Shown piece by piece: positions 22,375 through 48,669 of a stretch of 64,000 bases of DNA. How positions within the stretch are numbered: the first letter of the stretch is position 1; the number at the start of each line of letters is the position of its first letter. The DNA lies in IMG/VR virus record IMGVR_UViG_3300035212_003113, positions 124,001 through 188,000 of that record, one strand, 5' to 3'. The notes beneath the pieces are model-generated. The model saw only the letters and a list, made by a program, of their open reading frames with translations, was not told the origin of the DNA and searched no databases. A program made the position numbers and the translations under genes.

Positions 22375-22398
22375 TCACTGCGGCATGCATCTGCCTTG

Positions 22399-25300: not shown

Positions 25301-25647
25301 AGCCACTTTAATCCGCCGCTTTCAAAACCTAGTACAGCTCCTTCGAAATAGCTATTTGTTGTTTGAATAGCGCTTGCAACTAATCCATCGCCTTGGTAAG
25401 ATGGATTTATAAAGTTAATTACTTCAATCTTTCTATATATCTTCCACAGAAGATAGATCTCTCCTGCCGGAGCCTCGAGCTCTCTTAGTATTGTGCTGGT
25501 AAGAGGAGATCCATACTCTTTATATTCTAGCCGACTATAAAGATCAACAATTTCCCCTGGTCTTATCTTTACTTTTCCAAGTAGATTGACATCAGATTTA
25601 GTTATATTCTTTACAGTAAATATCGGAAATACCGGATCAGTCCTCAT
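22399..25647 (-). CDS. tail fibre / virion surface protein C (1082 aa) with repetitive shaft
   Basis: Seven TYG-x8-VDAKGRxTSA-type repeats, GDRVL...NGIY fibre module, globular C-terminus. Confidence 0.85.
23985..25285 (-). repeat. intragenic tandem repeat, seven ~60-codon units with two linker types
   Basis: GGDLxxxYPNPTL linker x4 and VTGTAPI/VSASNPL linker x3, each followed by GVxAxTYG...VDxKG. Confidence 0.85.
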
Positions 25648-25666
25648 GAGTCGCCCCCTCTTCTAC

Positions 25667-28600
25667 TCACTTCAGCGGCTCTAGTAATAGCTCTAATGCT
25701 GCCAGTCTGGCTTCTAGATCCTGATTCTTCTGATGCAGCTCCTGGCATGCCTTTACGACGACGGGAAATAGTCGCAGTGGGGTTGCCTCTAATCTATCTG
25801 GATTATCTTTTAGGGCCAGGCCCATCCACTCCGCATTAGCAGCAGTCTGCGCGGCGTCGAGTTCCTGCGCAATGAATCCGCCCTCAAACTTTTCCTGCTT
25901 CTTGCTGCCGTCAGACACCCCCGGTGTCTGGCCGATAACATTGCCTTCGTCGTCGAGGACTGGAGAGGAGTACCACTCACGGCGGTCCCATTTGAACTGC
26001 ACAGGGCGCACGGTCGAGAGAAAATCTATGCCGAGCGAAATGTCTTGGATGTCAGCCTTGTCGCGCGCGTCGGAGATCAGCGTGATCGTGTTAACTGCGC
26101 AACGCAGCGTCGTCACCGACGAGTTGCCAAGCGTGATCTGATTTGTCGCACTAACGGCAGTCGGAGTCGCGCCATTTCCGATACAAGTCAGGTTCGTTCC
26201 TGATAGAAAAGCGACGCCGCCTGCCGTCTGCCCGAGCACGGTGTTCGTGATCTGCGAGCCCAGCCCTCTTCCGACGTTCAAGCCGTTGATCAGCGCATCA
26301 CCGCCTTGAACATCAAGCGTGGCCGCAGGGTTGACGTTCCCGCCAGTCGCATTTACCAGTACCCTGTTGTTTGACGTATCTACTGCAAATATGCGTACTG
26401 AACCGGCTGCATTTTGTACCTGAAATGCAGTGGTATTGCCCGTATTCGCTCTGGCTATAACAGAGCCAGCGATTCCAGCGTTCGCTCTTGCTCCTGCGAC
26501 AATCACTACGTCGCCGCCGTTTGTGTTTCCTACTGCTGCACCGGCTTGAGCAGTCAGAGTGATACTTGTTCCGTTGCCAGACCCGGCCGTGCCACCTGCC
26601 ACTTGCAGCGGCCCTGTAGGCGTCGACGTACCGACTCCGAGCCGTGAGTTCGTGTTATCCCAGAACAGCCTAGCATTATTCTGCGAATAGATGCCTGATG
26701 CGCCAGCGAAAACAACGCTGCCTAGGGTGAACGCGGTTGCCGTTCCCGTGCCGCCGTTCGCTGCACTGACCGTGCTCCATGAAAACGTGCCCGACCCGTT
26801 GTTCGTCAATACGCCCGAAGCGTTCGCTGCCGGGAACGTCGTCGTCTGACCCCGGATGGCGACGATGTCGCCATCCGCGCTGACTTGAAACTGACCCGTC
26901 GTGCCGACGTTGAGCGTCGATGACAACGTGCGCGAACTGGAGGCCACCGTCGTCGTCGTGTAATAGCCAGACGGGAGTGTCAGCCCGCCGTTCACTATCG
27001 TTGGCGTCGCCAAGATGGCAAAATTTGTGGGAGCTAGCAGAGCCGACGCCAGTGTGTTTCCGGTGACGCCCGTTCCGTACCGAACCATGACCGAGCTAGC
27101 AGTGTTCACGTCTCTGACGACGGTTCCAGCCGGGACAAACAGGTCAAACGACGCCTCAACGGTACACACTGCTGTCGTGGTCAGGGAAATAGTCGTACTG
27201 CCGAGCGTGAGAACGCCGCTGAACGTGACCGCAGGGACAAAGCCAATGCCCAACCGGTTGTTCGTGTCGTCCCAGAATAGGTTGTTGTTGTCCTGCGTAT
27301 AGACACCCGACGCGCCAGCGAAGACAACGCTGCCGAGGGTCAACGCAGGGCCGCTCGGTGCAGTTGCCCATGACAGATTGCCTGCACCATCATTAACAAG
27401 AGCTCCTACTGCATCTGGAGTAGGGAACCCGCGATCCAATACGCCGCCGCCTAGTAACTCGTAAGAAGATGCAGTTATCCTGCCGCCATTTGAAATAGTT
27501 ACTTGAGGAATTCCCGTCTCAGAAATATTGAGATAGCCGTCATCAATATTTACTCCTATGGACCAGTCTGCTGGAAATGCAGACTCGCTAAGTTTAGAGA
27601 CCAGGTGCAGGGACGTTGGGCCGAAATACCCATCTGCCCAGCGGTTTGCGTATGACCCTATTTCATATGCAAGATCGGTATCAGGAATGAGCGAGGCATT
27701 TATAGACGTAGTTGTGAGATTACTAAGTGCTCTGTTGGCTATGCTGGCATCGTCTATAGTATCAAGCGCACTCTGAACAGTGGTGTCCGCTGGAGACAAT
27801 ATGCCATTAAAGCTAGCTGTGTCAGTGTATATCGCACTCGCCGGATGATCTGGATCAAGTAGCCCAGAAAGATTACCGTGATCGCTTATCTGATTTATTG
27901 GCAACGAAGAGACTTTGCGCAAGTCTACGTAATTTGCGCCTGTATCGGTGGACACAATTCTACCTTTTATGGCATTTGTATAGGCATTTGCTGTTTGATA
28001 TATAACTGTGCCAATTATCACTATCTCTGCGAATGGCAGACCCGACAGCGTAGCAAGCTCGGTTGTAGCTCCGGAGCGGGCCGCACTTATGTTGTTGTAT
28101 TCGTTTATGCCCTGTATTGCTATAATTGGATGATTTATGTCATTTGTTGCAAAGACATGCACTAGCACGAAATTGCCGCTTGTCAGCTCTGTTAGCTGCC
28201 ACGTAGAGCCGGTCCACTGATTATAAGGAAGCCTCCCGCCAGCACCTGTATAGCCCGCAGTTCCAGAATAGATTATAGGAAATGTGTCGGCCGTCTTACT
28301 TCTCCAATTACCGGAGACTCCCTCTCTAAAGAAAACCGGTATGCTGGCAATTGGAGCAAGCTCCTGGGGGGCACCATCTGTTATTATATGCTTTATGTCT
28401 TCGTCATAAAACATGCCATTTCCGGCAGAAAACTGGCCATGAATTGCGCTGTCTCCGGCGCCGTCAACATTGAAATCGCTTAGTGCGAATCCATTTATAA
28501 AAGCAGCGCCCATGCTATTATGTAGCCACAGGTGCGTTCCGCCGTCCATGACAAGACCATGACGCTCATCTGCAACGTATATCGCCTTGTTGTTTCCGGC

Positions 28601-28912
28601 GTCCCAGTATACGATTGATACGATTGCATAGGATAAAATCAAGTCATCTGAAAATGTTTGTGTGGTCTCTAGCGTGTAGCCATCAAAATAAAAAAACCAC
28701 AGCCCCTCTGTGTCTGTTATAGAAGCAGATGCAGCGGACAGATGAGTATATTTCACTCCTTGTGCATAGTACTCGAAACGAGATGATGTCGGGGTAATCG
28801 TAAGAGTGCGACTTGTGTCATCAAACGACAGCGTCGTGTCGGCTCTGTTGGGAAAACCGGTTGGCTCCTTGGACATCTCATATATTGTCTTTACGTTTGG
28901 ATTGTGCGACAT
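25667..28912 (-). CDS. tail fibre protein B with C-terminal S74 intramolecular chaperone
   Basis: ISDARDKADI...GIDFLSTVRPVQFKW...GFIAQE...VVKACQEL coiled coil; LFWDxTNxRLGxG repeats. Confidence 0.9.
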   Translation of the reverse strand: MSHNPNVKTIYEMSKEPTGFPNRADTTLSFDDTSRTLTITPTSSRFEYYAQGVKYTHLSAASASITDTEGLWFFYFDGYTLETTQTFSDDLILSYAIVSIVYWDAGNNKAIYVADERHGLVMDGGTHLWLHNSMGAAFINGFALSDFNVDGAGDSAIHGQFSAGNGMFYDEDIKHIITDGAPQELAPIASIPVFFREGVSGNWRSKTADTFPIIYSGTAGYTGAGGRLPYNQWTGSTWQLTELTSGNFVLVHVFATNDINHPIIAIQGINEYNNISAARSGATTELATLSGLPFAEIVIIGTVIYQTANAYTNAIKGRIVSTDTGANYVDLRKVSSLPINQISDHGNLSGLLDPDHPASAIYTDTASFNGILSPADTTVQSALDTIDDASIANRALSNLTTTSINASLIPDTDLAYEIGSYANRWADGYFGPTSLHLVSKLSESAFPADWSIGVNIDDGYLNISETGIPQVTISNGGRITASSYELLGGGVLDRGFPTPDAVGALVNDGAGNLSWATAPSGPALTLGSVVFAGASGVYTQDNNNLFWDDTNNRLGIGFVPAVTFSGVLTLGSTTISLTTTAVCTVEASFDLFVPAGTVVRDVNTASSVMVRYGTGVTGNTLASALLAPTNFAILATPTIVNGGLTLPSGYYTTTTVASSSRTLSSTLNVGTTGQFQVSADGDIVAIRGQTTTFPAANASGVLTNNGSGTFSWSTVSAANGGTGTATAFTLGSVVFAGASGIYSQNNARLFWDNTNSRLGVGTSTPTGPLQVAGGTAGSGNGTSITLTAQAGAAVGNTNGGDVVIVAGARANAGIAGSVIARANTGNTTAFQVQNAAGSVRIFAVDTSNNRVLVNATGGNVNPAATLDVQGGDALINGLNVGRGLGSQITNTVLGQTAGGVAFLSGTNLTCIGNGATPTAVSATNQITLGNSSVTTLRCAVNTITLISDARDKADIQDISLGIDFLSTVRPVQFKWDRREWYSSPVLDDEGNVIGQTPGVSDGSKKQEKFEGGFIAQELDAAQTAANAEWMGLALKDNPDRLEATPLRLFPVVVKACQELHQKNQDLEARLAALELLLEPLK

Positions 28913-28928
28913 ATTTACTCCACCCTGA

Positions 28929-31900
28929 TCAGATTATCCACCAAGCGCTGCCATCCGATTGAATCTTTATTGCTTCATACTGTGTGCTGAGCGTGTATGT
29001 TGTCGCGCCGTCTATTAGTTCGGACGCATCAGCATCTACGGTGACAATATTCGCCGTGATGTCTTTTTTCTTTATAGTAAATATGCGTTCGACTGCTGAT
29101 GCAGCGGATGGCAGCGTCATCGTTATTGCGCCGGAAGAAGCATCGGCCAAAATTGTGCCATCGGAAGAGGCCAGAGTATAATTGGCAGTTTTGGTTGAAA
29201 TCGGCGCAGTGCTGTTCTGTGCGGCGCCCGAGGTCCATGACAGAGTTCCGCTTCCATTGTTTGTTAGAATAGAATTTGCAGAGCCCTGAGATGATGGGAA
29301 GCTATATGGGATATCGTTTATTCTAGTTAGATCCCCGCTAGAGCTTACCTGGAACTGCGAGCTGGCGCCGACGGATAGCGCCGAAGCTGGCGCGTTCGTA
29401 CCGACACCGACACGCGCATTCGTCGTGTCGACGTCGAAGATGGTCGAGCCCGCTGCGTTCTGCACCGAGAATGCGGTCGTGCCGTCCGACGTGTTCCTCG
29501 AGAGCACGACGCCGTCGTTGCCGACGCTGAAAGTGGTCGTGCCGTTATCACGGGCAAGGAAGATTGGATCGCCCTTGTCCATGTTGTCTGCTATCAGCGC
29601 CGCTGAGGCGTTGACCGTAGGCTGCGACGCGCCTGTGGTCTGCAAAGCGAACAGGCCGCCGATGCGGATACCGCTGTTGTTCTTCGCCATGCCCGTGACG
29701 GCTATGTTGGCACCAGTGCCGTCGCCTGTTGTGTTGCCGAAGACGGCGTAGTTGCGGGCGCCGTTCGACGCGAGGCCCATCATACCGATGTTGTGGCCAG
29801 ATGCCGTCGTGCCCGCAGCCGAGCCTTGCAGCGCGAAGTTGGCTTGTAGCGCCGAGACGGGGTCTTGTCCGCTGCCTGCGATCACGGTGCCGAAGCTGCC
29901 CGCGTAAGAAGTTGACGGCGTACCTGCGCCGCTCAAATAACCGATAACGCCGTAGACCGGGGCGACGACGCTCGCAGATACGCTTCCTTCAATGTACGAA
30001 ACGATGGTTCCGCCGCCAGGGGTCAGGGTTGCGTCGACGTTCAGCGCGTACACGCCACTGGCCGTCGAGCCTGCCTGCACGTCGACGACGTGCGCCGGAG
30101 TTGCTATGCCTACGCCTAGGCGATTATTTGAATCGTCCCAGTACAGGTTGGAATCCGATGATAGCGATGAAGTGCCGCTCCAAAATGCCACGCGCGTAGC
30201 TACGCCACTGCCTGTAACAGTACCTGCTGGTGACCATGACAGGTTGCCCGAGCCATCATTTGTCAGCGCGCCCGACGCATTCGCCGCCGGGAACGTCGTC
30301 GTCTGGCCCCGGATAGCGACAATGTCGCCCGAGGAATTAACTTGGAACTGAGAGGATGAGCCAACAGATAATAGCGATATAGGACTTGTAGTCCCTATGC
30401 CAACGCTCCCGGCATTTGTGATACGCACACGCTCAGTCGTTGAGCTGCCTAACGTAGTAAATCCATCAGTGCCGCTAGCAGTCGTGTGAAATTCAATTCG
30501 ACCGCCGCTCGCCGTCGACGTAAAAGCCTGCTCGGCCTTCATAGTCATCATCGCGCCGTAGTTAATGCCGCCCGTGGCAGTCCAACCTGCACCGAGCACA
30601 TTGATCATGCCGTCGCCAGCGCCGATCTGCGTCGGCGCGGCCTTCGTTCCTCTCGAACGCACACCGGCAAACTGACCACCGCGATATGACTCTTGAAGCA
30701 CGGTTCCAGCGGCGCCGTGCCCAAGCATCACCGCGCCTGCTGTCACGTCAGAACTGTCAAACGTAAACTGCCCGTATACAGTCGACGTTCCAACCAGAAA
30801 CACGGGCGATCCGCCCGACTGCTGGAAGCGCGCGATCTCCGTGCCGTTGACGCCGACACCGATAATATCGTTCGACGGCGAGAAGAAGCCGCTGTTCAGG
30901 TTGTCGCGGAAGGCGACGGCGGGAGCGGCGGCGCTACCATCGGGGATGGCGAGTTGGCCGCTGGCGATGTCAAGGGCGGCAACGGGGGCGTTGGTGCCGA
31001 TACCCAGTTTACCGCTGCCCGTGTTGTCCCAATAGAGGTTCGCATTCGACGACAGCGACGAAGCGCCATCCCAGAATGCCACACGCGTTGCAGTACCGCT
31101 GCCGGTGACCGTGCCACTTCCGCCCGCCGCAGCCCACGACACGTTGCCGGCGCCGTCTGTCGTGAGTACTTCACCGCTCGCGCCGTCTATCATTGGAAGG
31201 GTAAATGCATCGCTTATATTTACCGGAGTGGTGACGGAACCGATGGTTACCCCAGTTGTTAAATAATAGGCCGAATTATTTCCTATTTTAATTGGTCCGC
31301 CATCATTATCAATCCACAGCGGCTTCTCAATCGGATACTCGTTATTGGTATAGCGAAGCGAAAGACCAGGCGAGAATCCAAGTGACCCCTGAAGCTGTAG
31401 GAGTGCAGTGTCGTCGGTAGCGCCGAGCTTAAGATAAAGCGCAGGGTCGCCCAGATCTAGACCGAGTGCAGCCTCGTTGCCCCCTATAGAAGGGACCAAC
31501 GGCCCCGCCACAAATCGGGCATACTGACTGGATAAAATTCCTTCTACTCCAAGATTCTCGACTACCACTGCTCCAGTAGTCAGCCACTTCAAGGCAGAGC
31601 TGCCGTCAAAAACTCCTGCATTGCTAAATTGAATCGCCCGATCTGGACCGCCTGGTGCGCCACTTGCAGGCGAATCCCACGATAGATTTCCGGCTCCATC
31701 GTTCGTTAATACAGTTCCGGCAGAGCCCACGGCCGCAGGCCAGGCCGCATCAACGCCTCCAGACCCCAGAAACAAGGTTCCTATTGCAGAAATCTGAATG
31801 TCAGCAAAGCTTGACAGCGATATATTTTCTGTGCCAGAGACAGAAAACTCGCCATTCCCGGAATCCGTTGTAATCGTGTTGCCCGACTCATAAGCAGCCT

Positions 31901-32216
31901 GTAAGCTAGAGCTAGCAGAGGAAAGAAGGGCAAGTAGGCTGTCAACACTTATTTTATTTAACTCTGTAGAGGCATAATCTATGTACGCAATGTAGCCGTC
32001 TAGCAGCGGTGGTACTATTGGAGCCACCAGGAATTCGCCATAAAAGTAGCCATCTGCCGAGCCGGACAACCCCTGATATGACCCACCATCCAGTGAAAGC
32101 TCTATTCGGCCAAGGTCGTAGTTATACCTAATTATGGCCATACCGGCTTCTGGAACGCCTAGACCCTCGCCCGCCCTAAAGGTCAGAAAAGGAATTGTTT
32201 GTTTTTTCTGCGTCAT
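28929..32216 (-). CDS. tail fibre / virion surface protein A
   Basis: GAGGAG RBS before ATG 32216; repeated LTxDGxGNxSW, ERVRITNAGSVGIGT; C-terminal TKTANYTL...SDGSAWWII domain. Confidence 0.85.
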   Translation of the reverse strand: MTQKKQTIPFLTFRAGEGLGVPEAGMAIIRYNYDLGRIELSLDGGSYQGLSGSADGYFYGEFLVAPIVPPLLDGYIAYIDYASTELNKISVDSLLALLSSASSSLQAAYESGNTITTDSGNGEFSVSGTENISLSSFADIQISAIGTLFLGSGGVDAAWPAAVGSAGTVLTNDGAGNLSWDSPASGAPGGPDRAIQFSNAGVFDGSSALKWLTTGAVVVENLGVEGILSSQYARFVAGPLVPSIGGNEAALGLDLGDPALYLKLGATDDTALLQLQGSLGFSPGLSLRYTNNEYPIEKPLWIDNDGGPIKIGNNSAYYLTTGVTIGSVTTPVNISDAFTLPMIDGASGEVLTTDGAGNVSWAAAGGSGTVTGSGTATRVAFWDGASSLSSNANLYWDNTGSGKLGIGTNAPVAALDIASGQLAIPDGSAAAPAVAFRDNLNSGFFSPSNDIIGVGVNGTEIARFQQSGGSPVFLVGTSTVYGQFTFDSSDVTAGAVMLGHGAAGTVLQESYRGGQFAGVRSRGTKAAPTQIGAGDGMINVLGAGWTATGGINYGAMMTMKAEQAFTSTASGGRIEFHTTASGTDGFTTLGSSTTERVRITNAGSVGIGTTSPISLLSVGSSSQFQVNSSGDIVAIRGQTTTFPAANASGALTNDGSGNLSWSPAGTVTGSGVATRVAFWSGTSSLSSDSNLYWDDSNNRLGVGIATPAHVVDVQAGSTASGVYALNVDATLTPGGGTIVSYIEGSVSASVVAPVYGVIGYLSGAGTPSTSYAGSFGTVIAGSGQDPVSALQANFALQGSAAGTTASGHNIGMMGLASNGARNYAVFGNTTGDGTGANIAVTGMAKNNSGIRIGGLFALQTTGASQPTVNASAALIADNMDKGDPIFLARDNGTTTFSVGNDGVVLSRNTSDGTTAFSVQNAAGSTIFDVDTTNARVGVGTNAPASALSVGASSQFQVSSSGDLTRINDIPYSFPSSQGSANSILTNNGSGTLSWTSGAAQNSTAPISTKTANYTLASSDGTILADASSGAITMTLPSAASAVERIFTIKKKDITANIVTVDADASELIDGATTYTLSTQYEAIKIQSDGSAWWII

Positions 32217-32401
32217 ATGCTCCTCAGCGCCAGGGGATCCAGCCCAATACAATGCACGGAGAACCATAGTTATTAAATGCGGGTGGTCCGCGAGCATTAA
32301 TTATATTTGCGTCAGATCGCAAACAAGCCGCGACCGCCGGCTGCAACTGAAGGCAACTAATTGAATAACAGTCTTTCTGATCTTTTCACATGGAGCAAAT
32401 A

Positions 32402-33301
32402 ATGAAATTTCCGCTTATAAAGATGGCAGCTGACCCCAGCCTAGGCAAAACCTGGCACGATATCTTTAAAAAAACTCCTGTCGCCCAGTTTGTTTCTTCC
32501 TTCAGCGGAAGCGACGATGCTTCGCGTAAAAAGGCACTTCAGCCGATATACGACAGCTACGTGGTATATATGACCACGCTGTCTGATGCAGCGGAAAAAG
32601 AACTGGCAATGAAAAATATTCAAGAGTTGGTGACGGCTCTAACTGCCAGCCCCAAGGCTCCGCAGGCAACGCCCGCGACGGGCAATGCCTCCCCTGCTGC
32701 GCAACCAAAAAAGACCGATACCAATAAATCTGGCCCGCACCCTGGTATGACCGCTCTACAGCAAAAGCTAAATGAATATCTCGCTGCAAATCCAAAAGAA
32801 GGCGTTTCGCCAGTAAAAGTGACCGGCTACCAGGGTGACCAGGGCACATGGGGAGTGATAAAGAAAGTATGGCCGCAATGGTTCGATGGCAACAAGACGA
32901 AGTTCAAAAGCTATTCACAGGTGACTGGCTGGATTGAGAAAGAGATGAGCGCGAAGCCGGCCGGCGCGCCAGATGCTCAAAAAGCTGCACTAAACAACAA
33001 AATTGTCTCAGAAGAAGATCGGCAATTGGTGGCTGCATGGAGAGCATTCTTGCAGGCAGACTCGCTAAATGTAGGCGCTGATGTCGTCAGCACATATGCG
33101 GCCGGCAGCCCTAAGACGGTCGGATCCAATATTGCAAAATACATTGCAGATGGAAAGATGAAAACACCGGTAAAAGCGCCGCTTGAAGCTGCGCAGGCCC
33201 ATCTTGCAATTGGTTTCCCAGCAGAAGCGACAAAGGCCCTTGCCCAAGGCGCTGCAGCTGCAAAAAAATACAAGGGCATGCGAAAGCTGGATAATAAATG
33301 A
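32402..33301 (+). CDS. hypothetical protein with possible peptidoglycan-binding-like segment
   Basis: GGAG RBS; LQQKLN...VTGYQGDQGTWGVIKK resembles PG_binding_1; N-terminal MKFPLIKMA. Confidence 0.6.
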   Translation: MKFPLIKMAADPSLGKTWHDIFKKTPVAQFVSSFSGSDDASRKKALQPIYDSYVVYMTTLSDAAEKELAMKNIQELVTALTASPKAPQATPATGNASPAAQPKKTDTNKSGPHPGMTALQQKLNEYLAANPKEGVSPVKVTGYQGDQGTWGVIKKVWPQWFDGNKTKFKSYSQVTGWIEKEMSAKPAGAPDAQKAALNNKIVSEEDRQLVAAWRAFLQADSLNVGADVVSTYAAGSPKTVGSNIAKYIADGKMKTPVKAPLEAAQAHLAIGFPAEATKALAQGAAAAKKYKGMRKLDNK

Positions 33302-33319: not shown

Positions 33320-33388
33320 ATGAGAAATAAACCAACTTTTGACCTCGAGTCCTCGGCATAGTCCGAGGACTTCTTTTTTGCCGCTTGA
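33320..33388 (+). pseudogene. relic duplicate of RNase HII 5' end containing a terminator hairpin
   Basis: MRNKPTFDLESSA*SEDFFFAA* vs MIKNSPTFALESSAWSEDLFFAAC; stem agtcctcgg/ccgaggact plus T-run. Confidence 0.85.
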
Positions 33389-33487: not shown

Positions 33488-35389
33488 ATGAAGTATTTTG
33501 TATACAAAGTAGATCACGACTTTAAGCGGCCAGGTGGCTTTCAAGAGGCCACGGATGCAGAGGACAAGATATGGTCGTGTCTAAAGATGTTTCACCAAGA
33601 AGTCGACAGCATCGACAATGCTGACATAGCCTTTATAGGATTGAATAATGCTTCATTTTACTTCAATAAGGGTGACCTTAAGAAAGTGTGGCAAGAGTCT
33701 GTTTGCCCAAGACTCGTCAATAAAGATATCCCACATGTGGCAATATTCACTTACGTTATAAATGAAGATGACCTGAGCTTTATCCCGCCATGGATAACAA
33801 TATGGGCATACGAAACAGAATGCTCGCATCACGACTCCCCGTCTCTGCAGACCACGGACAGCGGATGCGGAGACCGGATGTGCATGATACCATATGTACT
33901 CACTCCTCAGACACATCCTGCGGCAGGAGTTATTGAGACCACAAATATAAATCCTGAAAACTTCAATACCGAGCTGTGGACCAGGAGATCTAACACGGCA
34001 TTTATAGGCTCTTTACAGGCAGGCGGGCGACCGCGCATAAATACTCGCGCTAGCCAAGTTATTGGCTGGCAGTCGCAAATTGGGTGCGACATATATGGAG
34101 ATCGACAAGCTACCGAGCCAAATGACACGTACTCTAGATACAAATTCGCTCTAATTCTGCGAGGGGATACTCCGACTCGTAAAGCGTTCTATCAAGCCAT
34201 TGCAGCCGGGGCAATTCCAGTAATTACTGAAAGCGCATGGCAACAGTACAGCGAGCTGTACAGAGGTCATTGCGAAAGCCTGGCCGACATAGTCGTAGTT
34301 GTGCCAGATAATGCCGAGCTATGGGACTGCGCCGAAATACAAAAGATCCTAAATAAAAGAGCAATGGAGTGCGCTACGTTGCTTCCACGGCTGCACAGCT
34401 GGTCGAGCAAATATCTTGATTATGACAGCGGCGGGGTCGTAGATGCGGCAATGCGCGCAACTCTGGCCAAAGTGAGGAAGCCAGCCATGCCCTTGGCATA
34501 CATCCACTCACTGGAGCCAGCAAGCGTATATCGACCGACAAGCGTAAAGATTAGTGAACAAGAGGTGATAACTGAAGAAAACATACTAGAAAGCCAGTAT
34601 GCCCTGGAGCAAATAATTCTCAAAACCGTCTACAACTATCCTTATAAAACTGGTTGCCTAGACAAGGCAACGGCTGCAATAGTACCAGTTCATACCTTTT
34701 TAACATGCTGGAATCGGCCGAATCACTATTCCGTGATCGACTCTGTAAACGTAATAAAAAAAGCTTTAAATGCGCTCCCTGCATGGAAAAACAGCAGCGT
34801 GCCCCATTACCTTGGATATGCCGATGTTCTTTGGAATGACGAGCGCGTCTTTCTCCGACACGTAGATATTCCTGATAATACAACAGTTATTGCCCTGGAG
34901 GCTTGCGACCTTCCGGTGCAACAAGAGGCAGTCCCATTTCCATGCGGAAGCATGCCTGGTGTTCTTTCATCAGCGGATCGGCAATTAGCTGTGTACATAG
35001 GAAGGGAGAGAGAAGAGGTCAGCGGGTACGATATCGATTACGAGATGATAAACACACCTGGCTGGCACTCTACAAATACCCAAAACACCAGGATTGTGCA
35101 GGCCTACTCCCAGCATAAATTTTCTTTGCAACCTCACGGAGACCGAGTGACAAGGCGAGGCTTCTATCAGTCCGTGGCATGCGGGTGCATACCCGTGATT
35201 ACTGCTGACTGCGTCAAGGCGTATAGCGATGCTACCGGGCTGGATGTATCAGAGTTTTGCATAATTATCCCGGAGTGGCACGAAAACGTTGTAGAACTAT
35301 TGCGACAATCAGACTTCGAGTCCATGCAAAAGAAATTGCCCCAGTTATCATTATCAGGCAGGATCTTGAAAATCACGGGGTTGTACTGA
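33488..35389 (+). CDS. exostosin-family (GT47-like) protein with two tandem domains
   Basis: FALILRGDTPTRKAFYQAIAAGAIPVI and FSLQPHGDRVTRRGFYQSVACGCIPVI. Confidence 0.85.
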   Translation: MKYFVYKVDHDFKRPGGFQEATDAEDKIWSCLKMFHQEVDSIDNADIAFIGLNNASFYFNKGDLKKVWQESVCPRLVNKDIPHVAIFTYVINEDDLSFIPPWITIWAYETECSHHDSPSLQTTDSGCGDRMCMIPYVLTPQTHPAAGVIETTNINPENFNTELWTRRSNTAFIGSLQAGGRPRINTRASQVIGWQSQIGCDIYGDRQATEPNDTYSRYKFALILRGDTPTRKAFYQAIAAGAIPVITESAWQQYSELYRGHCESLADIVVVVPDNAELWDCAEIQKILNKRAMECATLLPRLHSWSSKYLDYDSGGVVDAAMRATLAKVRKPAMPLAYIHSLEPASVYRPTSVKISEQEVITEENILESQYALEQIILKTVYNYPYKTGCLDKATAAIVPVHTFLTCWNRPNHYSVIDSVNVIKKALNALPAWKNSSVPHYLGYADVLWNDERVFLRHVDIPDNTTVIALEACDLPVQQEAVPFPCGSMPGVLSSADRQLAVYIGREREEVSGYDIDYEMINTPGWHSTNTQNTRIVQAYSQHKFSLQPHGDRVTRRGFYQSVACGCIPVITADCVKAYSDATGLDVSEFCIIIPEWHENVVELLRQSDFESMQKKLPQLSLSGRILKITGLY

Positions 35390-35443
35390 GGCAATGCTCT
35401 CGGCTCTGCGTCTGGGCTTTTTTTCTAAGCGTCTCGCGTTAGC

Positions 35444-36055
35444 ATGATCAAAAATTCGCCAACATTCGCTCTTGAGTCCTCGGCGTGGTCCGAGGATCTC
35501 TTTTTTGCTGCTTGCGATGAGGCAGGCTATGGCTGTGCTGCAGGCAGCATGTGGGTGGCCGCAACAATCTGGCCCAAGAATAGTCCCATTCTGCCGTCGA
35601 TGTCGGGCATAAAAGACAGCAAAAAGACTACAGCGGCACAGCGAGAAGAGCTGGTCAAGCTGATTAAAGACAGCTGTCAGTGGTTCTTATGGGAGATAAC
35701 AGTCGACCAGATCAACTCAGGCAATCCATATTGGCTTCGCTTCGAAGCCGCTGACACAGGCCTGGCATCTCTGCCCCCGCTAGTCACATGCTTTGATGGG
35801 AATGTCTGCTTGAAGAATAACAAGCACCACAACACTTGCCAAGTAAAAGGTGACGCGATAAGTATCAGCATAGCTGCGGCGTCTATTCTTGCGAAACATG
35901 CTAAAGATTTAGAATGTAAGGACCTACACGAAAAACATCCAGCATATGGATTCATTAATCACAGCGGATACTTAACAGAAGAGCACACAAAAGCACTAAA
36001 GACGTTCGGCCCAGCGCCCTGTCATCGCAGCAAATACATATCAGCTCACATATAA
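35444..36055 (+). CDS. rnhB: ribonuclease HII
   Basis: DEAGYG, DSKK, FDG, KGD, IAAASILAK, YGFxxHxGY, HR. Confidence 0.93.
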   Translation: MIKNSPTFALESSAWSEDLFFAACDEAGYGCAAGSMWVAATIWPKNSPILPSMSGIKDSKKTTAAQREELVKLIKDSCQWFLWEITVDQINSGNPYWLRFEAADTGLASLPPLVTCFDGNVCLKNNKHHNTCQVKGDAISISIAAASILAKHAKDLECKDLHEKHPAYGFINHSGYLTEEHTKALKTFGPAPCHRSKYISAHI

Positions 36056-36100
36056 ACCGCGCAAAACTTCGACAAAGTAAGAAAAAATGATAGGATAGAT

Positions 36101-37795
36101 ATGAGCGCGCAATGGCTGCCGGTACTGGCAAGCCCTAAGACAAGTAACAAGCATCTCGGGAGAAAAGGTCAAGTGACTTTTTCCGGCGATGCCTTTGATA
36201 AACTTGTTGCAAGCGCAAATATCTCGCTGCAGAACTGGCCGCGCATGGTGCCGCACCGTGCCGAATTTCGCGTTCTAGTCGAGGCGACATTTCCTGGGTT
36301 CTGGGCGCGAGCAGAGGGCGTTGGCGTAGAGCTGGCTACGCGTCTTGTCATGGCCGCCGGACGTGCCGCCGAGACTGGTGCAGCAGTCAAGATCCCAGCT
36401 GGCGATGTTTTTCTATATAAAGCGAAGCAGCTAGGTTTTGCTCAGAAAAAGAACCACTCTTACTTTGCAGAGCGCGAGCGCGCTCGTCAGTTTGTTGCGC
36501 GACGTGGCGGTGGCAGCAGCGCATCACGTATCCTAAAAGATGCCGTAAATAAACTAGGCATGCAGAATCACTGCAGCATTGCCGTCTATGCTGCGCCAAG
36601 CGCCACTCACGTAGTGTTGATACCACATTCTGCCGACGCAGATGTCGGCAGAGTTTATACTGCCGGCCGCGGCGACCAATTCTATCTGGCTGCCGAAGAA
36701 GCAGGAAACAACAACAATCATGTGTCGCGCTACATGACCAGCGTACCAGTAGGCCGCTGGCAGTCTACCGCCTCTAGGCAGCAAATACTGCAGCTTATTG
36801 ATGAGCGCTGCTCACATGCTGGTTATCGCGAAATTCTAAAAGAGACCGTGATCGTCGGCATGGCGAGCGACTTTCGCTCAAACTATATTCAAGAGCACGA
36901 CTCGCAGCGAGTATTTGCGACTGGCGCCAGCATGCAGTTTATGCCATCCTGGTTGCGCAGTGCGTTGTTTCCAGAATGGTTTGAGATGGACTTCTCAAAC
37001 ATGCATCTTGCAATCCTCAATAGCCAAGCCGATCTCGGCATCAACCTGGATACTTCTATTTGGACCCAGATCATGGATACCTGGGAGACTGCGATCAATG
37101 CCGCAGGAGAAGCCCTGGGTCGCGAGGCGATGCTAGATGAGGCCGGAATAAAAGACCTGTTCGACGGCAGCATGAACAGCGGAAATAGCAAAACACTGTT
37201 TTTCGATACCTCCAAGGTTGATCGGACTGCCCTAAAGAAGGCGCTAAAGGTGAGCCTATATAGCCTGCAATTCGGGATGACAGCGCCAGCAGCGCGGCGC
37301 GGCTTTACTGGCGACTTGCTTAAAATGGGCTTCTCGCGCGGAGAGGCTACATTCCTGGGGAACCTTTGGTCACGCGATCCGATCCTGCAAAAGATTGCCA
37401 GTGGTATAAAGGCATACTGCGAAACACATGCCATTAGCCCCAGCGAATTGGCGCTCCGCTGCCAGGCAATCGAAACCACCCTGGTAAAAGAAATCTATAC
37501 AGTTGCACGCAGATTTAAGCGCTCAGACGTCTGCATCACCCTGCACAGCCATGACGGTGTATCAGTGTGGTCGCGTAGCGCGAGCGTAGGGCGAAAGTTT
37601 CATGCGCGCTGTGCGGCACGATGTGCGCGCCTTCTGGAGAAGCTAGGAATCCAGTCACGACTGGAGAGCAAAGGCTTGCCAAAAGAGGTCCGGACAGAAA
37701 AGGCACCCGCGCCCAAGTCAGAAGTGACGTCTTGTGTAGAACTGGCCCTGGTCACTGAGCGCGATTCACGTCCCGTGGCAACCGGCCCTCCTTAG
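36101..37795 (+). CDS. divergent family-A-like polymerase (TV-Pol-like), no exonuclease motifs seen
   Basis: RVF...MQFMPSWLR, EMDFSNMHLAIL (motif A), RxxLKxxLKxxLYxxxFG (motif B), LHSHDGV (motif C). Confidence 0.7.
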   Translation: MSAQWLPVLASPKTSNKHLGRKGQVTFSGDAFDKLVASANISLQNWPRMVPHRAEFRVLVEATFPGFWARAEGVGVELATRLVMAAGRAAETGAAVKIPAGDVFLYKAKQLGFAQKKNHSYFAERERARQFVARRGGGSSASRILKDAVNKLGMQNHCSIAVYAAPSATHVVLIPHSADADVGRVYTAGRGDQFYLAAEEAGNNNNHVSRYMTSVPVGRWQSTASRQQILQLIDERCSHAGYREILKETVIVGMASDFRSNYIQEHDSQRVFATGASMQFMPSWLRSALFPEWFEMDFSNMHLAILNSQADLGINLDTSIWTQIMDTWETAINAAGEALGREAMLDEAGIKDLFDGSMNSGNSKTLFFDTSKVDRTALKKALKVSLYSLQFGMTAPAARRGFTGDLLKMGFSRGEATFLGNLWSRDPILQKIASGIKAYCETHAISPSELALRCQAIETTLVKEIYTVARRFKRSDVCITLHSHDGVSVWSRSASVGRKFHARCAARCARLLEKLGIQSRLESKGLPKEVRTEKAPAPKSEVTSCVELALVTERDSRPVATGPP

Positions 37796-37992
37796 AACTG
37801 CTACAGCTTAAATCCGCAGCTGCCTGAGAGACCGGCGGCTTTTTGTGTTTCTCTTTCATATAAAATCAGCAAAAGCAGCGCCGCCCAGGGCGCCAGAGAA
37901 GTAAGAGCAGATAATCAACGGCAGTCAGCTAGGTGCGGATACTGCCAAATAGCCACTGAGCGTACAGCTTAGGTAAAGAGATTGGTACCTGT

Positions 37993-38379
37993 ATGAAATT
38001 AGAACAAAGTCTTCATATCATGAATGAGTTAGAATTATCACGCTACTTGCTCGCCCGCGGGTTTCCCGAGGAGCTACCGTGTTTCTCTGTCTACGACCTC
38101 TCAATGTTCATGATGGGTCGCCAGGTCACGGAGGCTGAGATTATTACTGGTGGCAAGTCCGTATGCTTGTTTTGGTCATCTAAGAATCTAATTGCTACTA
38201 CAAATATTCTAGAGGAGCCGTGTGCAAGCACCGTTATTCTATCTTCTTTGCGTGGCAGCAATTTCTCTATCTCACTGAGGAGAGCCGGGTTCCACAGTTC
38301 TATTCATCCAATTCAATATACTCCAGAGTGGGTGGACTGTTTTGTGTTTTCGTTGGGCGCGGGGGTGAAGTATGAGTAA
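37993..38379 (+). CDS. hypothetical protein, module gene X1 (paralog of 39173..39559)
   Basis: Shared MKLExxLH, GFP, CxFWSS, LRGSxFS, SIHPxxYTPEWVxCFVF. Confidence 0.75.
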   Translation: MKLEQSLHIMNELELSRYLLARGFPEELPCFSVYDLSMFMMGRQVTEAEIITGGKSVCLFWSSKNLIATTNILEEPCASTVILSSLRGSNFSISLRRAGFHSSIHPIQYTPEWVDCFVFSLGAGVKYE

Positions 38380-46481: not shown

Positions 46482-46745
46482 GTGGAAGATAATAAGGGGC
46501 GGCGTTTCTTTCGCCGTCGAGACCGCAACGAGGATGACTCGTTTGAGGTCAAAGTAGTACTCCGTGATGGAGAGACTGCTGAGTCGTTAGTTAGACGTTT
46601 CAAATGGGCCGTTGAGGCCAGTGGCGTACTGAAGGAGGTGAAAGATCGTGAATACGCCATGACGCCGTCTGAAAAAGCAAAATTCAAACAGCGCCGCGCT
46701 GCAAAGCGCCGAAACAAGTCTAGGCAAGATCGAGACGAGGGATGA
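46482..46745 (+). CDS. rpsU: ribosomal protein bS21
   Basis: VVLRDGETAESLVRRFK...GVLKEVKDREYAMTPSEK...AAKRR. Confidence 0.88.
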   Translation: MEDNKGRRFFRRRDRNEDDSFEVKVVLRDGETAESLVRRFKWAVEASGVLKEVKDREYAMTPSEKAKFKQRRAAKRRNKSRQDRDEG

Positions 46746-46856: not shown

Positions 46857-47444
46857 GTGGCTAGACCTAAGAAACCAATTACGCCAATCGCGCCGCCACC
46901 GATCCAGCAGGGCCGGGATCGCATACTGCCGCACAATCCAAAGCGCAGCATATTGCTATTTGGAGAAGTGAATACAGATATGACAAAGCAACTGGCGGAG
47001 CAGATAGCGGTTCTCCTAAAAGAGGACGATAAGAGTCCTATTTGCGTAGTGGTCAATACTGAAGGAGGCGGTGTTTATGAATCATTTGCAATGCATGATC
47101 TCATTCGCGCCTGTTCCGTGCCGATCTACACGTACGGTCTTGGTACGGTAATGAGCGCCGGCACGATTATGCTTGCAGCAGGCAAAAAGCGGTATGCTTA
47201 TCCTAACTGCTGGATCATGGCTCATGAGCCGTGGTTTGTTGGCTCAGAGCTACGAGCAGGCGAGCTGAAAGCAGACCTGATGCACAATGAAAAACTGAGC
47301 ATGGTTTTCTACGGGCTTTATAGCCGTTACTGTCAGAAGCCAGCAGACATTATTGAAAACGATCTAAATGGCAGGACGATATACTTCAATGCAATCGAGG
47401 CGAAGAAGTATGGATTTGTGGACGACATCGTAGATATCGACTAG
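46857..47444 (+). CDS. clpP: ClpP-family protease
   Basis: LFGEV, NTEGGGV, VMSAG (Ser), MAHEP (His), YFNAIEAKKYGFVD. Confidence 0.9.
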   Translation: MARPKKPITPIAPPPIQQGRDRILPHNPKRSILLFGEVNTDMTKQLAEQIAVLLKEDDKSPICVVVNTEGGGVYESFAMHDLIRACSVPIYTYGLGTVMSAGTIMLAAGKKRYAYPNCWIMAHEPWFVGSELRAGELKADLMHNEKLSMVFYGLYSRYCQKPADIIENDLNGRTIYFNAIEAKKYGFVDDIVDID

Positions 47445-47803: not shown

Positions 47804-48158
47804 GCAGATGAGTCCAACAAAGCTTTCTGCGGCATATCGCAAGCTGCAGGATGCTCAGGATTCAATGACTGCCGCAGGGAAAAGCTTCTGGGCATATTTT
47901 AAATCTCGTCCACTTGATGCAGACATGGAGCAGCTAAATACCGCGGCGAAAAATCTAAATGCGGTCACTACTGCCGAAGGAGCACAGACCAGCGCCACGC
48001 TGGCACTAAACGGTCTGTTGCATTTGGCTTCGCGGATTCGAGATCTAGAGGAAGAGAATCGCAGTTTGCGCAGACGTCTAGAAAGGTTGGAAGCAAATGC
48101 AGAACGGCCGAGTGAAGTTCCAGCAGAGCAACCACCAGCTGAAATCACTCCTGAGTGA
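47796..48158 (+). CDS. hypothetical coiled-coil protein
   Basis: AGGAG RBS; RIRDLEEENRSLRRRLERLE. Confidence 0.65.
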   Translation: MSKQMSPTKLSAAYRKLQDAQDSMTAAGKSFWAYFKSRPLDADMEQLNTAAKNLNAVTTAEGAQTSATLALNGLLHLASRIRDLEEENRSLRRRLERLEANAERPSEVPAEQPPAEITPE

Positions 48159-48669
48159 GCGAGCAGCGGAATCAGCATTCGCTCTACTCTCCGCAAGGCG
48201 TCAGCTACAGGCAGGCAGTGGAAAGTTTACGCACAAATGCAGCTGTCCTCATCCTGCCCATAAAGGTGGCAGCGAGAAGACGGCTAGTTTTTACTTTAGC
48301 CGTGACACAGGGCAATTCTTCTGCTTTGGCTGCAACATATATGGCAACGCTTTTGATCTAATCTCTTTGCTGGGAGGCAGCAGCGACAATGCTCTTGATG
48401 CCGCAATGCAACAGGGACCTATTGCGATACCAGAGACGCCAAACATTCAAAAGCTAATTGGCGATCACAGCAGAAAACTAGTCAAGAAGTGTAGAAGTAA
48501 GCTGGCGGCCGCGGTGGGCGGATCAACCTGGGAAGCAGACTTTAAGTGGATGCAGGACTTCTATTGTAAGCTCGACAAGATACTTCCAGAGCTAGAGGAC
48601 GAATCGGCAGAGCAGATTCATGGACGGTTTCTCCAGTTCAACATGGAGCTAAACAGGAGATTTAAGTGA
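48097..48669 (+). CDS. stand-alone primase-type CHC2 zinc-binding domain protein
   Basis: CPHPAH...EKTASF...FFCFGC...GNAFDL; no TOPRIM domain; start uncertain. Confidence 0.8.
   Translation: MQNGRVKFQQSNHQLKSLLSERAAESAFALLSARRQLQAGSGKFTHKCSCPHPAHKGGSEKTASFYFSRDTGQFFCFGCNIYGNAFDLISLLGGSSDNALDAAMQQGPIAIPETPNIQKLIGDHSRKLVKKCRSKLAAAVGGSTWEADFKWMQDFYCKLDKILPELEDESAEQIHGRFLQFNMELNRRFK

What the first reader, a model, noticed from the sequence alone, without database searches (positions are those of the whole stretch)
35444..37795. Divergent family-A (TV-Pol-like) polymerase directly downstream of RNase HII
The 564-aa ORF shows, in order, RVF-x4-SMQFMP-x3-R, motif A (EMDFSNMHLAIL), motif B-like (KVSLYSLQFG), QAIE and motif C (HSHDG). 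No proofreading or 5'-nuclease motifs are visible. This fits the transposon/viral polymerase (TV-Pol) branch related to Pol A and T7 RNAP, proposed to be primase-polymerases, but no D5 helicase is fused here. Inference: it may pair with RNase HII and the ligase for primer or ribonucleotide replacement, or act as a priming enzyme with the orphan CHC2 finger.
Basis: partly seen in the sequence, partly recalled or inferred. Interest (0 to 1): 0.7.

Follow-up and report, generated by a model that had tools for sequence, protein, structure and literature searches.

The report
Exonuclease-less PolA-type polymerase paired with RNase HII
A freshwater jumbo phage carries a stripped-down relative of DNA polymerase I that always sits directly behind an RNase HII gene; the pair probably replaces RNA primers or stray ribonucleotides with DNA, in a phage that lacks an ordinary Pol I.

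Summary

No Pfam, PHROG, NCBIfam or PDB sequence search names the 564-aa protein. Its AlphaFold model (residues 205-531) matches only family-A polymerases at the top: Pol theta Z 12.5, Klenow 12.1, T7 RNAP 9.5. Family profiles align motif 2, A, B and C with E. coli Pol I. The matches are R270=R668, D297=D705, K379/K383/Y387/F391 for the O-helix, and D485=D882.

There is no exonuclease. Residues 45-200 form an orphan fold. The steric-gate Glu is His or Gln across the family, never Glu.

The family profile matches the likely TV-Pol of Microcystis phage Ma-LMM01 (89%) slightly better than Pol I (73%). It does not match T7 RNAP (1%).

RNase HII lies immediately upstream in 11 of 11 loci of this subfamily, down to 23-25% identity, often with 4-bp overlaps.

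The phage also encodes DnaE, DnaB and a stand-alone DnaG core, but no Pol I or FEN. So the "orphan" CHC2 finger has a likelier partner than this polymerase.

Best reading: a gap-filling partner of RNase HII. A primase-polymerase role remains a live rival.

The parts
35399..35418 (+). Terminator-like hairpin plus T-run between the GT47 glycosyltransferase gene (33488-35389) and RNase HII. It may mark the upstream boundary of the RNase HII-polymerase unit.
   Evidence: Pattern scan. This is a consensus match only.
35444..36055 (+). RNase HII (203 aa) with intact catalytic residues: D25-E26, D58-S-K, D118, D137.
   Evidence: PF01351 E 3e-26. phrog_19422 E 3e-28. The catalytic residues are invariant in 6 orthologs.
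36101..37795 (+). 564-aa exonuclease-less PolA-superfamily polymerase (P0001).
36113..36157 (+). Conserved N-terminal linear motif W-x3-[LV]-x2-P-[KR]-x3-K-[HN]-[LFI] (residues 5-19) in a tail predicted to be disordered. Possibly a docking motif; partner unknown.
   Evidence: Invariant in A1 and A3. pLDDT 27-37. Present in homologs at 23-25% identity.
36233..36700 (+). N-terminal alpha/beta domain (residues 45-200). It occupies the place of the 3'-5' exonuclease of Pol I but has no DEDD residues and no database fold match.
   Evidence: pLDDT 80-92. Best PDB Z 4.4 and no AFDB match. No invariant acidic residues.
36713..36880 (+). Short helical thumb (residues 205-260).
   Evidence: Structural alignments to Klenow and Pol theta start at residue 205. 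Helices 226-236 and 240-255.
36908..36958 (+). Motif 2 beta-hairpin region: R270 (= Pol I R668), Q279 (= Q677), P282 (= P680), R286.
   Evidence: hhalign to E. coli Pol I. R270 is invariant in 46/46.
36980..37018 (+). Motif A: catalytic D297 (= D705). H302 sits at the steric-gate position (= E710).
37235..37276 (+). Motif B / O-helix: K379-x3-K383-x3-Y387-x3-F391-G392 (= R754, K758, F762, Y766, G767).
37463..37474 (+). Q455-x-x-E458 helix motif. E458 is invariant across the family. Q455 is about 30 residues before motif C, as Q849 is in Pol I.
   Evidence: Shared with the Ma-LMM01 MAP_030 family.
37538..37567 (+). Motif C beta-hairpin: H484-D485-G486 (= H881-D882-E883).
37688..37792 (+). Hypervariable disordered C-terminal tail ending in the invariant [ST]-G-P-P (residues 561-564).
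37819..37844 (+). Hairpin (GCTGCC / GGCGGC, 9-nt loop) followed by TTTTT, 24 nt after the polymerase stop codon. Likely the end of the transcription unit.
   Evidence: Read directly from the sequence. Not listed by the scan, which allows loops of 3-8 nt only.

Best explanation
The 564-aa protein is a catalytically competent polymerase of the Pol A superfamily with no proofreading domain and a short thumb. It belongs to an uncurated, phage-borne clade nearest to the 'minimal' TV-Pol type. In a lineage of freshwater jumbo phages it forms a fixed two-gene module with RNase HII. Proposed mechanism: RNase HII cuts the RNA strand of RNA-DNA hybrids and leaves a 3'-OH. Those hybrids could be primers made by the phage's own DnaG-type primase, single ribonucleotides left by the DnaE-type replicase, or R-loop RNA. 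The PolA-type enzyme extends that 3'-OH for a short patch. The phage's ATP-dependent ligase, or the host's, seals the nick. The pair would thus stand in for bacterial Pol I, which the phage lacks. Shown: the fold, the catalytic residues, the absence of nuclease domains, the conserved gene pairing, and the phage's replication gene set. Inferred: the substrate, the order of steps, dNTP use, and any physical contact with RNase HII.
For: Fold: the top 16 VIA-align PDB hits are all family-A DNA polymerases or T7-like RNAPs (Pol theta Z 12.5, Klenow 12.1, Pol nu 11.2) over residues 205-531. All 50 top Foldseek PDB hits are Pol I-type enzymes. Sequence: the family profile finds only Pol A chains in the PDB (Taq E 0.003). 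8 of 46 distant homologs touch PF00476. hhalign to E. coli Pol I gives 73%, E 3e-5, pairing R668, Q677, D705, R754, K758, F762, Y766, H881 and D882 with conserved residues here. Linkage: RNase HII is the immediately upstream gene in 11/11 loci of the subfamily. These include homologs at only 23-25% identity, with 4-bp overlaps or 4-bp gaps and with differing outer neighbours. RNase HII keeps its catalytic residues. Need: the genome has DnaE Pol III alpha, DnaB, a DnaG core, an ATP ligase, and RecA and a gp32-like protein. It has no PF00476 Pol I, no PolB and no FEN. There is only one copy of this polymerase. Terminator-like hairpins flank the two genes.
Against: No biochemical or expression data exist, and no RNA runs hold the sequence. 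No 5'-flap nuclease was found to dispose of displaced strands. The ligase is 28 kb away. Both Pol I residues that exclude ribonucleotides are changed: E710 to His/Gln and F762 to Tyr. CcPol keeps them (PMC7581432). The enzyme might therefore use or tolerate rNTPs, which fits a primase better. More distant family members in about 32-kb phage contigs and other jumbo phages lack the RNase HII neighbour, so the family's ancestral role may be different. DnaE itself could fill primer gaps. Conserved adjacency within one phage lineage is partly inherited collinearity.
Confidence: 0.42

Rival explanations
1. It is a primase-polymerase in the sense proposed for TV-Pols and shown for CcPol-MP. It would start chains de novo on single-stranded DNA, perhaps with ribonucleotides. 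RNase HII would be linked because it later removes those primers.
For: Minimal PolA core without nucleases, as in TV-Pols (PMC2579912). The family profile matches the Ma-LMM01 MAP_030 family at 89%, E 2e-6, and shares His at the steric gate, Q..E and HDG. AFDB hits include PolA-like domains fused to primase/D5-type modules. The steric-gate Glu and F762 are changed. The orphan N-terminal domain and the conserved tails could supply template or partner binding. Distant members are the only visible polymerase in small phage contigs.
Against: The phage already has a DnaG catalytic core, a CHC2 zinc-ribbon protein and DnaB. There is no D5 helicase, integrase or transposase next to the gene. No OB-fold partner was detected. 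The downstream 128-aa ORF has no confident fold, is only 33% conserved, and lies beyond a terminator-like hairpin. De novo priming has been shown for only one PolA-type enzyme, and there it needs MP.
Confidence: 0.22
2. It is a repair polymerase of the Pol theta / Pol nu kind (lesion bypass or end joining). It would act with the phage's SbcCD, Cas4-like nuclease, RecA and ligase, and the RNase HII adjacency would be incidental.
For: The best structural matches are Pol theta and Pol nu. There is no proofreading domain. SbcD/SbcC, a PD-(D/E)XK nuclease and RecA are encoded in the genome.
Against: None of those repair genes is adjacent. The RNase HII link survives to 23-25% identity while outer neighbours change. 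Pol theta-specific inserts were not examined, and the match covers only the common core.
Confidence: 0.12
3. It extends R-loop RNA trimmed by RNase HII to start replication at an origin. RNase H plus Pol I do this for ColE1 plasmids, and RNase H1 plus Pol gamma do it in mitochondria. This is a variant of the best explanation with a different biological purpose.
For: The same gene-pair evidence applies. The ColE1 precedent of an A-family polymerase using an RNase H-cut transcript is established knowledge, not tested here. A short-thumb, low-processivity enzyme fits a hand-over to DnaE.
Against: No origin, R-loop-forming region or structured RNA was found nearby. Rfam gave nothing and the downstream spacer folds no better than shuffles. 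ColE1 uses RNase HI, not HII.
Confidence: 0.1
4. It is a small single-subunit RNA polymerase used for phage transcription.
For: T7 RNAP, mitochondrial RNAP and N4 RNAP II appear among structural hits (Z 9.5, 9.2, 7.3). Some AFDB look-alikes are annotated as RNA polymerases. The steric-gate Glu is absent.
Against: hhalign to T7 RNAP gives 1% probability against 73% for Pol I. No family member hits PF00940, while 8 hit PF00476. Motif A and the O-helix follow the DNA-polymerase pattern. The phage carries a sigma-like gene and T4-like traits, which suggests use of the host RNAP.
Confidence: 0.06

Closest known systems
Polymerase domain of bacterial DNA polymerase I (Klenow, KlenTaq) and of Pol theta / Pol nu
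   Same: Same thumb-palm-fingers fold (Z 11-12.5). Same motif 2 Arg/Gln, motif A Asp, O-helix basic-x3-Lys-x3-aromatic-x3-aromatic-Gly, and motif C His-Asp.
   Different: About 330 residues instead of about 400 for the core, with a short thumb. No 5' nuclease and no 3'-5' exonuclease; an orphan domain sits in its place. E710 is His, E883 is Gly, and F762/Y766 are swapped to Y/F. It falls below the Pfam PF00476 threshold.
TV-Pol family (Iyer, Abhiman and Aravind 2008, PMC2579912), represented here by the Ma-LMM01 ORF MAP_030 family
   Same: Minimal PolA core with the four published features. Found in viruses. Profile-profile match 89%, E 2e-6. Shared His at the steric gate, Q..E and HDG.
   Different: No D5 helicase, TV-PolN domain, integrase or transposase context. 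It has a conserved link to a nuclease gene (RNase HII), which the paper says TV-Pols never show. That MAP_030 is the published TV-Pol is my inference, from its being the only ORF in that genome to match and from the adjacent IS605-type transposases.
CcPol-MP primase of SCCmec (PMC7581432, PMC10061031)
   Same: An exonuclease-less A-family polymerase on a mobile or viral genome. The N-terminal region is non-canonical.
   Different: CcPol keeps E710 and F762 and is followed by an OB-fold partner and a helicase. Here both residues differ, and no OB-fold partner or helicase is adjacent.
T7-type single-subunit RNA polymerases
   Same: Shared palm/fingers architecture (Z 9.5). Lacks the steric-gate Glu.
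   Different: No sequence-profile relation (1%). No promoter-recognition N-terminal domain detected. About 560 aa against about 880 aa.
Bacterial ribonucleotide excision repair and Okazaki maturation (RNase HII or HI + Pol I + ligase), and ColE1 primer processing
   Same: The same trio of activities is encoded: RNase HII, an A-family polymerase and a ligase.
   Different: The polymerase lacks Pol I's 5' nuclease. No FEN was found. The coupling is by gene order, not shown biochemically.

Membership tests
Pol A superfamily (family-A DNA polymerase fold) | Right-hand thumb-palm-fingers fold with an RRM-type palm | tested here: met
   AF2 model pLDDT 76. VIA-align Z 12.5/12.1/11.2 to Pol theta, Klenow and Pol nu over residues 205-531. 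The top 16 hits are all of this superfamily. Foldseek top 50 are all Pol I-type.
Pol A superfamily (family-A DNA polymerase fold) | Two catalytic aspartates, in motif A (D705) and motif C (D882) | tested here: met
   D297 is 46/46 and D485 is 45/46 across the family. Both align to D705/D882. D297 ends strand 294-298, and D485 lies in the 477-482/486-491 hairpin.
Pol A superfamily (family-A DNA polymerase fold) | O-helix R/K-x3-K-x3-F/Y-x3-Y/F-G, and motif 2 Arg/Gln | tested here: met
   K379, K383, Y387, F391, G392, and R270, Q279, P282.
Pol A superfamily (family-A DNA polymerase fold) | Match to Pfam DNA_pol_A (PF00476) above its threshold | tested here: not met
   No hit for P0001 even at E 1. 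No six-frame hit in the genome. Only 8/46 distant relatives hit, best E 5e-5.
Pol A superfamily (family-A DNA polymerase fold) | Steric-gate Glu (E710) and motif C Glu (E883), typical of DNA-dependent DNA polymerases of the family | tested here: not met
   H302 (His 22, Gln 22, Trp 2 of 46) and G486 (46/46).
TV-Pol (Iyer et al. 2008) | Minimal core: bi-helical thumb, beta-hairpin with conserved Arg, two-Asp palm, HTH fingers with RxxxK | tested here: met
   Helices 226-236 and 240-255. Hairpin 261-274 with R270. D297 and D485. K379-x3-K383, with Lys in place of Arg.
TV-Pol (Iyer et al. 2008) | Detectable sequence relation to an accepted TV-Pol | tested here: inconclusive
   hhalign A2 against MAP_030 of Ma-LMM01 gives 83%, and against its family 89%, E 2e-6. 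All 68 other Ma-LMM01 ORFs score 0.8% or less. However, the HMMER profile found nothing in that genome. The Pol I score is similar (73%). That MAP_030 is the published TV-Pol is inferred. Sputnik V13 and CcPol were not available to compare.
TV-Pol (Iyer et al. 2008) | Context: fused or adjacent D5-like helicase, or TV-PolN domain with resolvase, integrase or transposase | tested here: not met
   The neighbours are a GT47 glycosyltransferase, RNase HII and unknown ORFs. The N-terminal domain is alpha/beta, not all-helical.
TV-Pol (Iyer et al. 2008) | No fusion or conserved neighbourhood with nuclease domains | tested here: not met
   There is no fusion, but there is a conserved neighbourhood with RNase HII in 11/11 loci.
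TV-Pol (Iyer et al. 2008) | Primase plus polymerase activity | not testable with these tools
   Needs enzyme assays.
CcPol-MP type PolA-SSB primase | Small OB-fold partner gene immediately downstream, followed by a helicase | tested here: not met
   The downstream 128-aa ORF has an ESM model at pLDDT 0.34 with no OB-fold match. It lies 197 bp away, beyond a hairpin plus T-run. No helicase follows. A poor model cannot fully exclude an OB fold.
CcPol-MP type PolA-SSB primase | Pol I-like sugar-discrimination residues E710 and F762 retained | tested here: not met
   H302 and Y387, against E174 and F225 of CcPol.
T7-like single-subunit RNA polymerase | Sequence relation to T7 RNAP / PF00940 and its motifs | tested here: not met
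   hhalign 1%. No PF00940 hits among 46 members. Structural Z 9.5 is lower than for the DNA polymerases.
RNase HII (type 2 RNase H), for the upstream gene | PF01351 match and the DEDD catalytic residues | tested here: met
   E 3e-26, profile positions 3-197 of 199. D25, E26, D118 and D137 are invariant.

The most novel reading that the evidence does not exclude
The RNase HII-polymerase pair is a self-contained initiation or primer-handling device of a kind not described for phages. The polymerase, with a His/Gln steric gate, would tolerate ribonucleotides. It would either lay down ribo-containing primers itself or take over RNA 3' ends that RNase HII trims from R-loops. This would give these jumbo phages a route to start DNA synthesis that is independent of DnaG. 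The conserved N-terminal and C-terminal GPP peptides would dock it to the replisome.
Probability: 0.12. Interest if true: 0.8.

Novelty: new variant of a known kind. Interest (0 to 1): 0.55.

Why it matters
By the literature read here, only one TV-Pol-type or minimal PolA enzyme (CcPol) has been characterised biochemically. What such enzymes do in large phages that already own a full bacterial-type replisome is unknown.

This subfamily is absent from Pfam, PHROGs, NCBIfam and GenBank phages. It comes with a built-in functional clue, a fixed RNase HII partner, and an altered sugar-selection site. That makes a clear bench test possible: is it a gap filler, a primase, or ribonucleotide-tolerant?

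It would also show how phages with DnaE replicases mature lagging strands without Pol I. A compact exonuclease-less A-family polymerase with an unusual steric gate could also interest enzyme engineers.

Tried and rejected
- **Single-sequence searches of P0001.** Pfam, PHROGs, PDB sequences and NCBIfam gave no hits.
- **tblastn against 50,697 GenBank phage records.** P0001, P0020 and P0029 found no match.
- **The search for related loci.** With A1, only 3 IMG/VR loci were found.
- **HMMER profile A2 against Ma-LMM01.** Nothing was found. Only hhalign saw MAP_030.
- **Cluster names for distant homologs.** None were on record.
- **Complex prediction of polymerase with RNase HII.** No verdict (score 0.00). 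This is not evidence either way.
- **N-terminal domain folded alone and searched.** The best PDB Z was 4.4 (R3H, Smr and winged-helix-like scraps), and AFDB gave nothing. I rejected the idea that it is a degenerate 3'-5' exonuclease.
- **Downstream 128-aa ORF as an MP/SSB-like partner.** It has no confident fold.
- **Spacer after the polymerase.** No Rfam family matched and it has no unusual stability.
- **RNA sequencing runs.** None hold the locus.
- **N-terminal QWLPVL as a beta-clamp motif.** Rejected, because the Gln is not conserved in distant homologs.
- **Asp-Asp distance in the model.** It could not be measured, because model coordinates are not exposed to scripts.
Full report
**Where it is.** The window is bases 124001-188000 of a 371,675-bp IMG/VR virus record with direct terminal repeats and 51% G+C. 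The record has T4-like jumbo-myovirus traits: rIIA, topoisomerase II, large terminase, portal and baseplate-wedge-like proteins. It also encodes Lon, GroEL, ClpP, thymidylate kinase and an IMPDH/GMP-reductase-like enzyme. The stretch under study recurs in several lake-water metagenome runs, so it is not an assembly accident. No RNA run holds it.

**Observation.** The finding's range holds two ORFs on the + strand. The first, 35444-36055, is a 203-aa RNase HII (PF01351, E 3e-26). Its catalytic Asp/Glu residues are invariant among orthologs. The second, 36101-37795, is the 564-aa ORF.
- R270-V-F
- S277-MQFMP282
- R286
- E295-MDFSNMHLAIL306
- K383-VSLYSLQFG392
- Q455-AIE458
- H482-SHDG486

Thirteen full-length homologs at 43-68% identity keep these residues invariant. 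All are from metagenomes and none carries a Pfam domain.

A profile search of 1.84 billion representative proteins found 147 clusters. Across 46 of them, R270, D297, K379, K383, E458 and G486 are invariant, and Y262, R286, Y387, G392 and D485 nearly so.

**What the protein is.** The protein alone matches nothing in Pfam, PHROGs, NCBIfam or the PDB sequence set.

Its AlphaFold2 model (mean pLDDT 76) gives only family-A polymerases as the top 50 Foldseek PDB hits. In an exhaustive VIA-align search the first 16 hits are all Pol A-superfamily enzymes, covering residues 205-531:

| Structure | Z |
|---|---|
| Pol theta | 12.5 |
| Klenow | 12.1 |
| Pol nu | 11.2 |
| apicoplast Pol | 11.1 |
| T7 DNAP | 9.7 |
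| T7 RNAP | 9.5 |
| mitochondrial RNAP | 9.2 |
| N4 RNAP II | 7.3 |

The next hits are generic RRM-palm cyclases at Z below 6.

Sequence evidence agrees:
- The family profile retrieves only Pol A chains from the PDB (Taq E 0.003, Pol theta 0.013).
- Eight of 46 distant members touch PF00476.
- hhalign against E. coli Pol I gives 73% probability, E 3e-5, over Pol I residues 665-917.

That alignment fixes the residue equivalences:

| This protein | E. coli Pol I |
|---|---|
| R270 | R668 |
| Q279 | Q677 |
| P282 | P680 |
| D297 | D705 |
| H302 | E710 |
| K379 | R754 |
| K383 | K758 |
| Y387 | F762 |
| F391 | Y766 |
| H484 | H881 |
| D485 | D882 |
| G486 | E883 |

By the same method T7 DNAP scores 20% and T7 RNAP 1%. 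The protein is therefore a Pol A-superfamily polymerase with a complete catalytic set. It is closer in sequence to the DNA polymerases than to the RNA polymerases.

**What is unusual in it.**
1. The core is compact. About 330 residues do the work of about 400 in Klenow, and the thumb is short (two helices, 226-255).
2. Residues 45-200 sit where Pol I has its 3'-5' exonuclease and are confidently modelled (pLDDT 80-92). They have no invariant acidic residue. Folded alone, they match nothing (best PDB Z 4.4, no AFDB hit). There is no proofreading domain and no 5' nuclease.
3. The two residues that E. coli Pol I uses to exclude ribonucleotides are both changed. These residues are as named in the CcPol paper. 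The steric-gate Glu is His (22/46) or Gln (22/46) and never Glu. F762 is Tyr in 45/46. The motif C Glu is Gly in 46/46. Sugar preference cannot be read from this, but it differs from Pol I and CcPol.
4. The disordered tails carry conserved short motifs. One is N-terminal, W-x3-[LV]-x2-P-[KR]-x3-K-[HN]. The other is [ST]GPP at the extreme C-terminus after a hypervariable linker. Both persist in homologs of only 23-25% identity. They look like docking peptides, but the partner is unknown.

**TV-Pol or not.** Iyer et al. (PMC2579912) define the TV-Pol core by four features:
- a bi-helical thumb;
- a beta-hairpin with an invariant Arg;
- a two-Asp palm;
- HTH fingers with RxxxK.

All four are present here, with Lys in place of Arg.

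For a sequence test I used Microcystis phage Ma-LMM01, which that paper names as a TV-Pol host. Of its 69 ORFs of 250 aa or more, only MAP_030 matches our family profile. MAP_030 lies at 22746-24266 on the - strand, next to IS605-type transposase genes. It scores 83%, E 9e-6, and all other ORFs score 0.8% or less. With a six-member MAP_030 family profile the match rises to 89%, E 2e-6.

MAP_030 shares three traits that set both families apart from Pol I: His at the steric gate, Q-x-x-E, and H-D-G. AFDB structure hits also include PolA-like domains fused to primase or D5-type modules, at E about 1e-3 to 1e-5.

Several points weigh against strict membership:
- The Pol I score is nearly as good.
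- HMMER alone sees nothing in Ma-LMM01.
- There is no D5 helicase, TV-PolN domain, integrase or transposase nearby.
- The paper states that TV-Pols never show conserved linkage to nucleases, and this subfamily does.

I therefore call it TV-Pol-like, a new variant, rather than a proven member.

**The RNase HII link.** In every locus of the subfamily that I could read, RNase HII is the gene directly upstream. That is 11 of 11 loci, from eight lineages counting the window's own phage. They include P0019, P0020 and P0021, at 23-25% identity to the window protein. In those three, the genes overlap by 4 bp or lie 4 bp apart.

The outer neighbours differ between loci: GT47 glycosyltransferase, an R2K ATP-grasp gene, DUF7448, or a large reverse-strand gene. 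So the pair is kept as a unit.

RNase HII is much more conserved than the polymerase, at 87-90% against 47-49% identity in the same phages. More distant family members have no RNase HII beside them. These are P0022, P0024, P0026 and P0035, some of them in about 32-kb phage contigs.

Terminator-like hairpins lie before RNase HII (35399-35418) and 24 nt after the polymerase stop (37819-37844; read). This suggests a two-gene unit.

A complex prediction of the two proteins gave no verdict and is not used as evidence.

**Replication genes of the phage.**
- Present:
  - DnaE-type Pol III alpha at genome 188780-192229
  - DnaB
  - a stand-alone DnaG catalytic core of 244 aa at genome 198763-199497
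  - a CHC2 zinc-ribbon ORF at window 48097-48669, just before the SbcD and SbcC genes
  - RecA and a weak gp32-like match
  - an ATP-dependent ligase at window 6928-8058
- Absent: any PF00476 Pol I, PolB, Prim-Pol or FEN. There is no second copy of this polymerase.

The primase is thus split into finger and core. The "orphan" finger has a more ordinary partner than the PolA-like enzyme.

**Mechanism.** The phage runs a bacterial-type replisome that makes RNA-primed Okazaki fragments, and it lacks Pol I. The simplest reading of a fixed RNase HII + exonuclease-less PolA pair is a stand-in for Pol I. RNase HII cuts RNA in hybrids and leaves a 3'-OH. The polymerase fills a short patch. A ligase seals the nick.

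The same chemistry would serve ribonucleotide excision repair or the maturation of R-loop primers. I give this family of readings about 0.4 to 0.5 in total, including the R-loop variant.

The main rival is a TV-Pol or CcPol-like primase-polymerase (about 0.2). It is favoured by the TV-Pol affinity and the altered sugar gate. It is weakened by the phage's own DnaG and DnaB and by the lack of an OB-fold partner or helicase next to the gene. A Pol theta-like repair role (about 0.1) and an RNA polymerase role (about 0.06) are less likely.

**Novelty.** The kind is known: a minimal A-family, TV-Pol-type polymerase. This subfamily has an orphan N-terminal domain, a His/Gln gate, terminal docking-like motifs and obligate RNase HII pairing in DnaE-encoding jumbo phages. 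It is not in Pfam, PHROGs, NCBIfam or GenBank phages. The searches I ran of the held paper library turned up no description of it.

Noticed in passing
window 48097-48669; genome 198763-199497 (L009:10763-11497): The phage's DnaG primase is split. A 190-aa CHC2 zinc-ribbon protein is encoded just upstream of SbcD (48666-49832) and SbcC (49829-51844). A 244-aa DNAG_N+Toprim core without a zinc ribbon lies 26 kb away near RecA and DnaE.
   Followed up: partly
window 33350-33369 and 35477-35496: The same hairpin (TCCTCGG-N6-CCGAGGA, then a T-run) occurs twice. One copy is intergenic, after ORF 32390-33301. The other is inside codons 12-18 of RNase HII. The second copy is kept at the same offset in relatives L022 and L023 but not in L020, which has the same amino acids.
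   Followed up: partly
window 18559-32297 (- strand): Four consecutive ORFs of 1081-1177 aa lie on the opposite strand. One has a C-terminal Peptidase_S74 intramolecular chaperone domain, so they are probably a set of tail-fibre paralogs. G+C rises to 0.62 at 18-20 kb.
   Followed up: no
window 46482-46745: An 87-aa ORF is 92% identical to a relative's gene that carries Ribosomal_S21 (PF01165). It lies between a weak WGR-domain ORF and ClpP (46857-47444), so the phage encodes an S21-like protein.
   Followed up: partly
window 33488-35389: A 633-aa protein has two Exostosin/GT47-type glycosyltransferase stretches directly upstream of RNase HII. It is present in some relatives (L020) but not others (L022). 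More glycosyltransferase genes lie at 4004-5771.
   Followed up: no
window 54711-62807: A 2698-aa ORF of unknown nature follows a sigma-70 region-2-like ORF (53957-54745) and a Cas4-like PD-(D/E)XK nuclease (53177-53947).
   Followed up: no
L029:226-2590; L032:3697-5988: In distant relatives the IMPDH-like gene is interrupted by a NUMOD3/DUF559 homing-endonuclease ORF with a faint intein signal. In addition, an AAA ATPase carries a LAGLIDADG insert. Mobile endonucleases or inteins are therefore active in this phage group.
   Followed up: no
window 35444-37795 versus L020 and L022: RNase HII is 87-90% identical between phages whose adjacent polymerase is only 47-49% identical. The polymerase evolves far faster than its partner.
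   Followed up: partly
window 37993-38379: The 128-aa ORF after the polymerase is kept in relatives (33% identity, 126 aa) but has no recognisable fold or family.
   Followed up: partly
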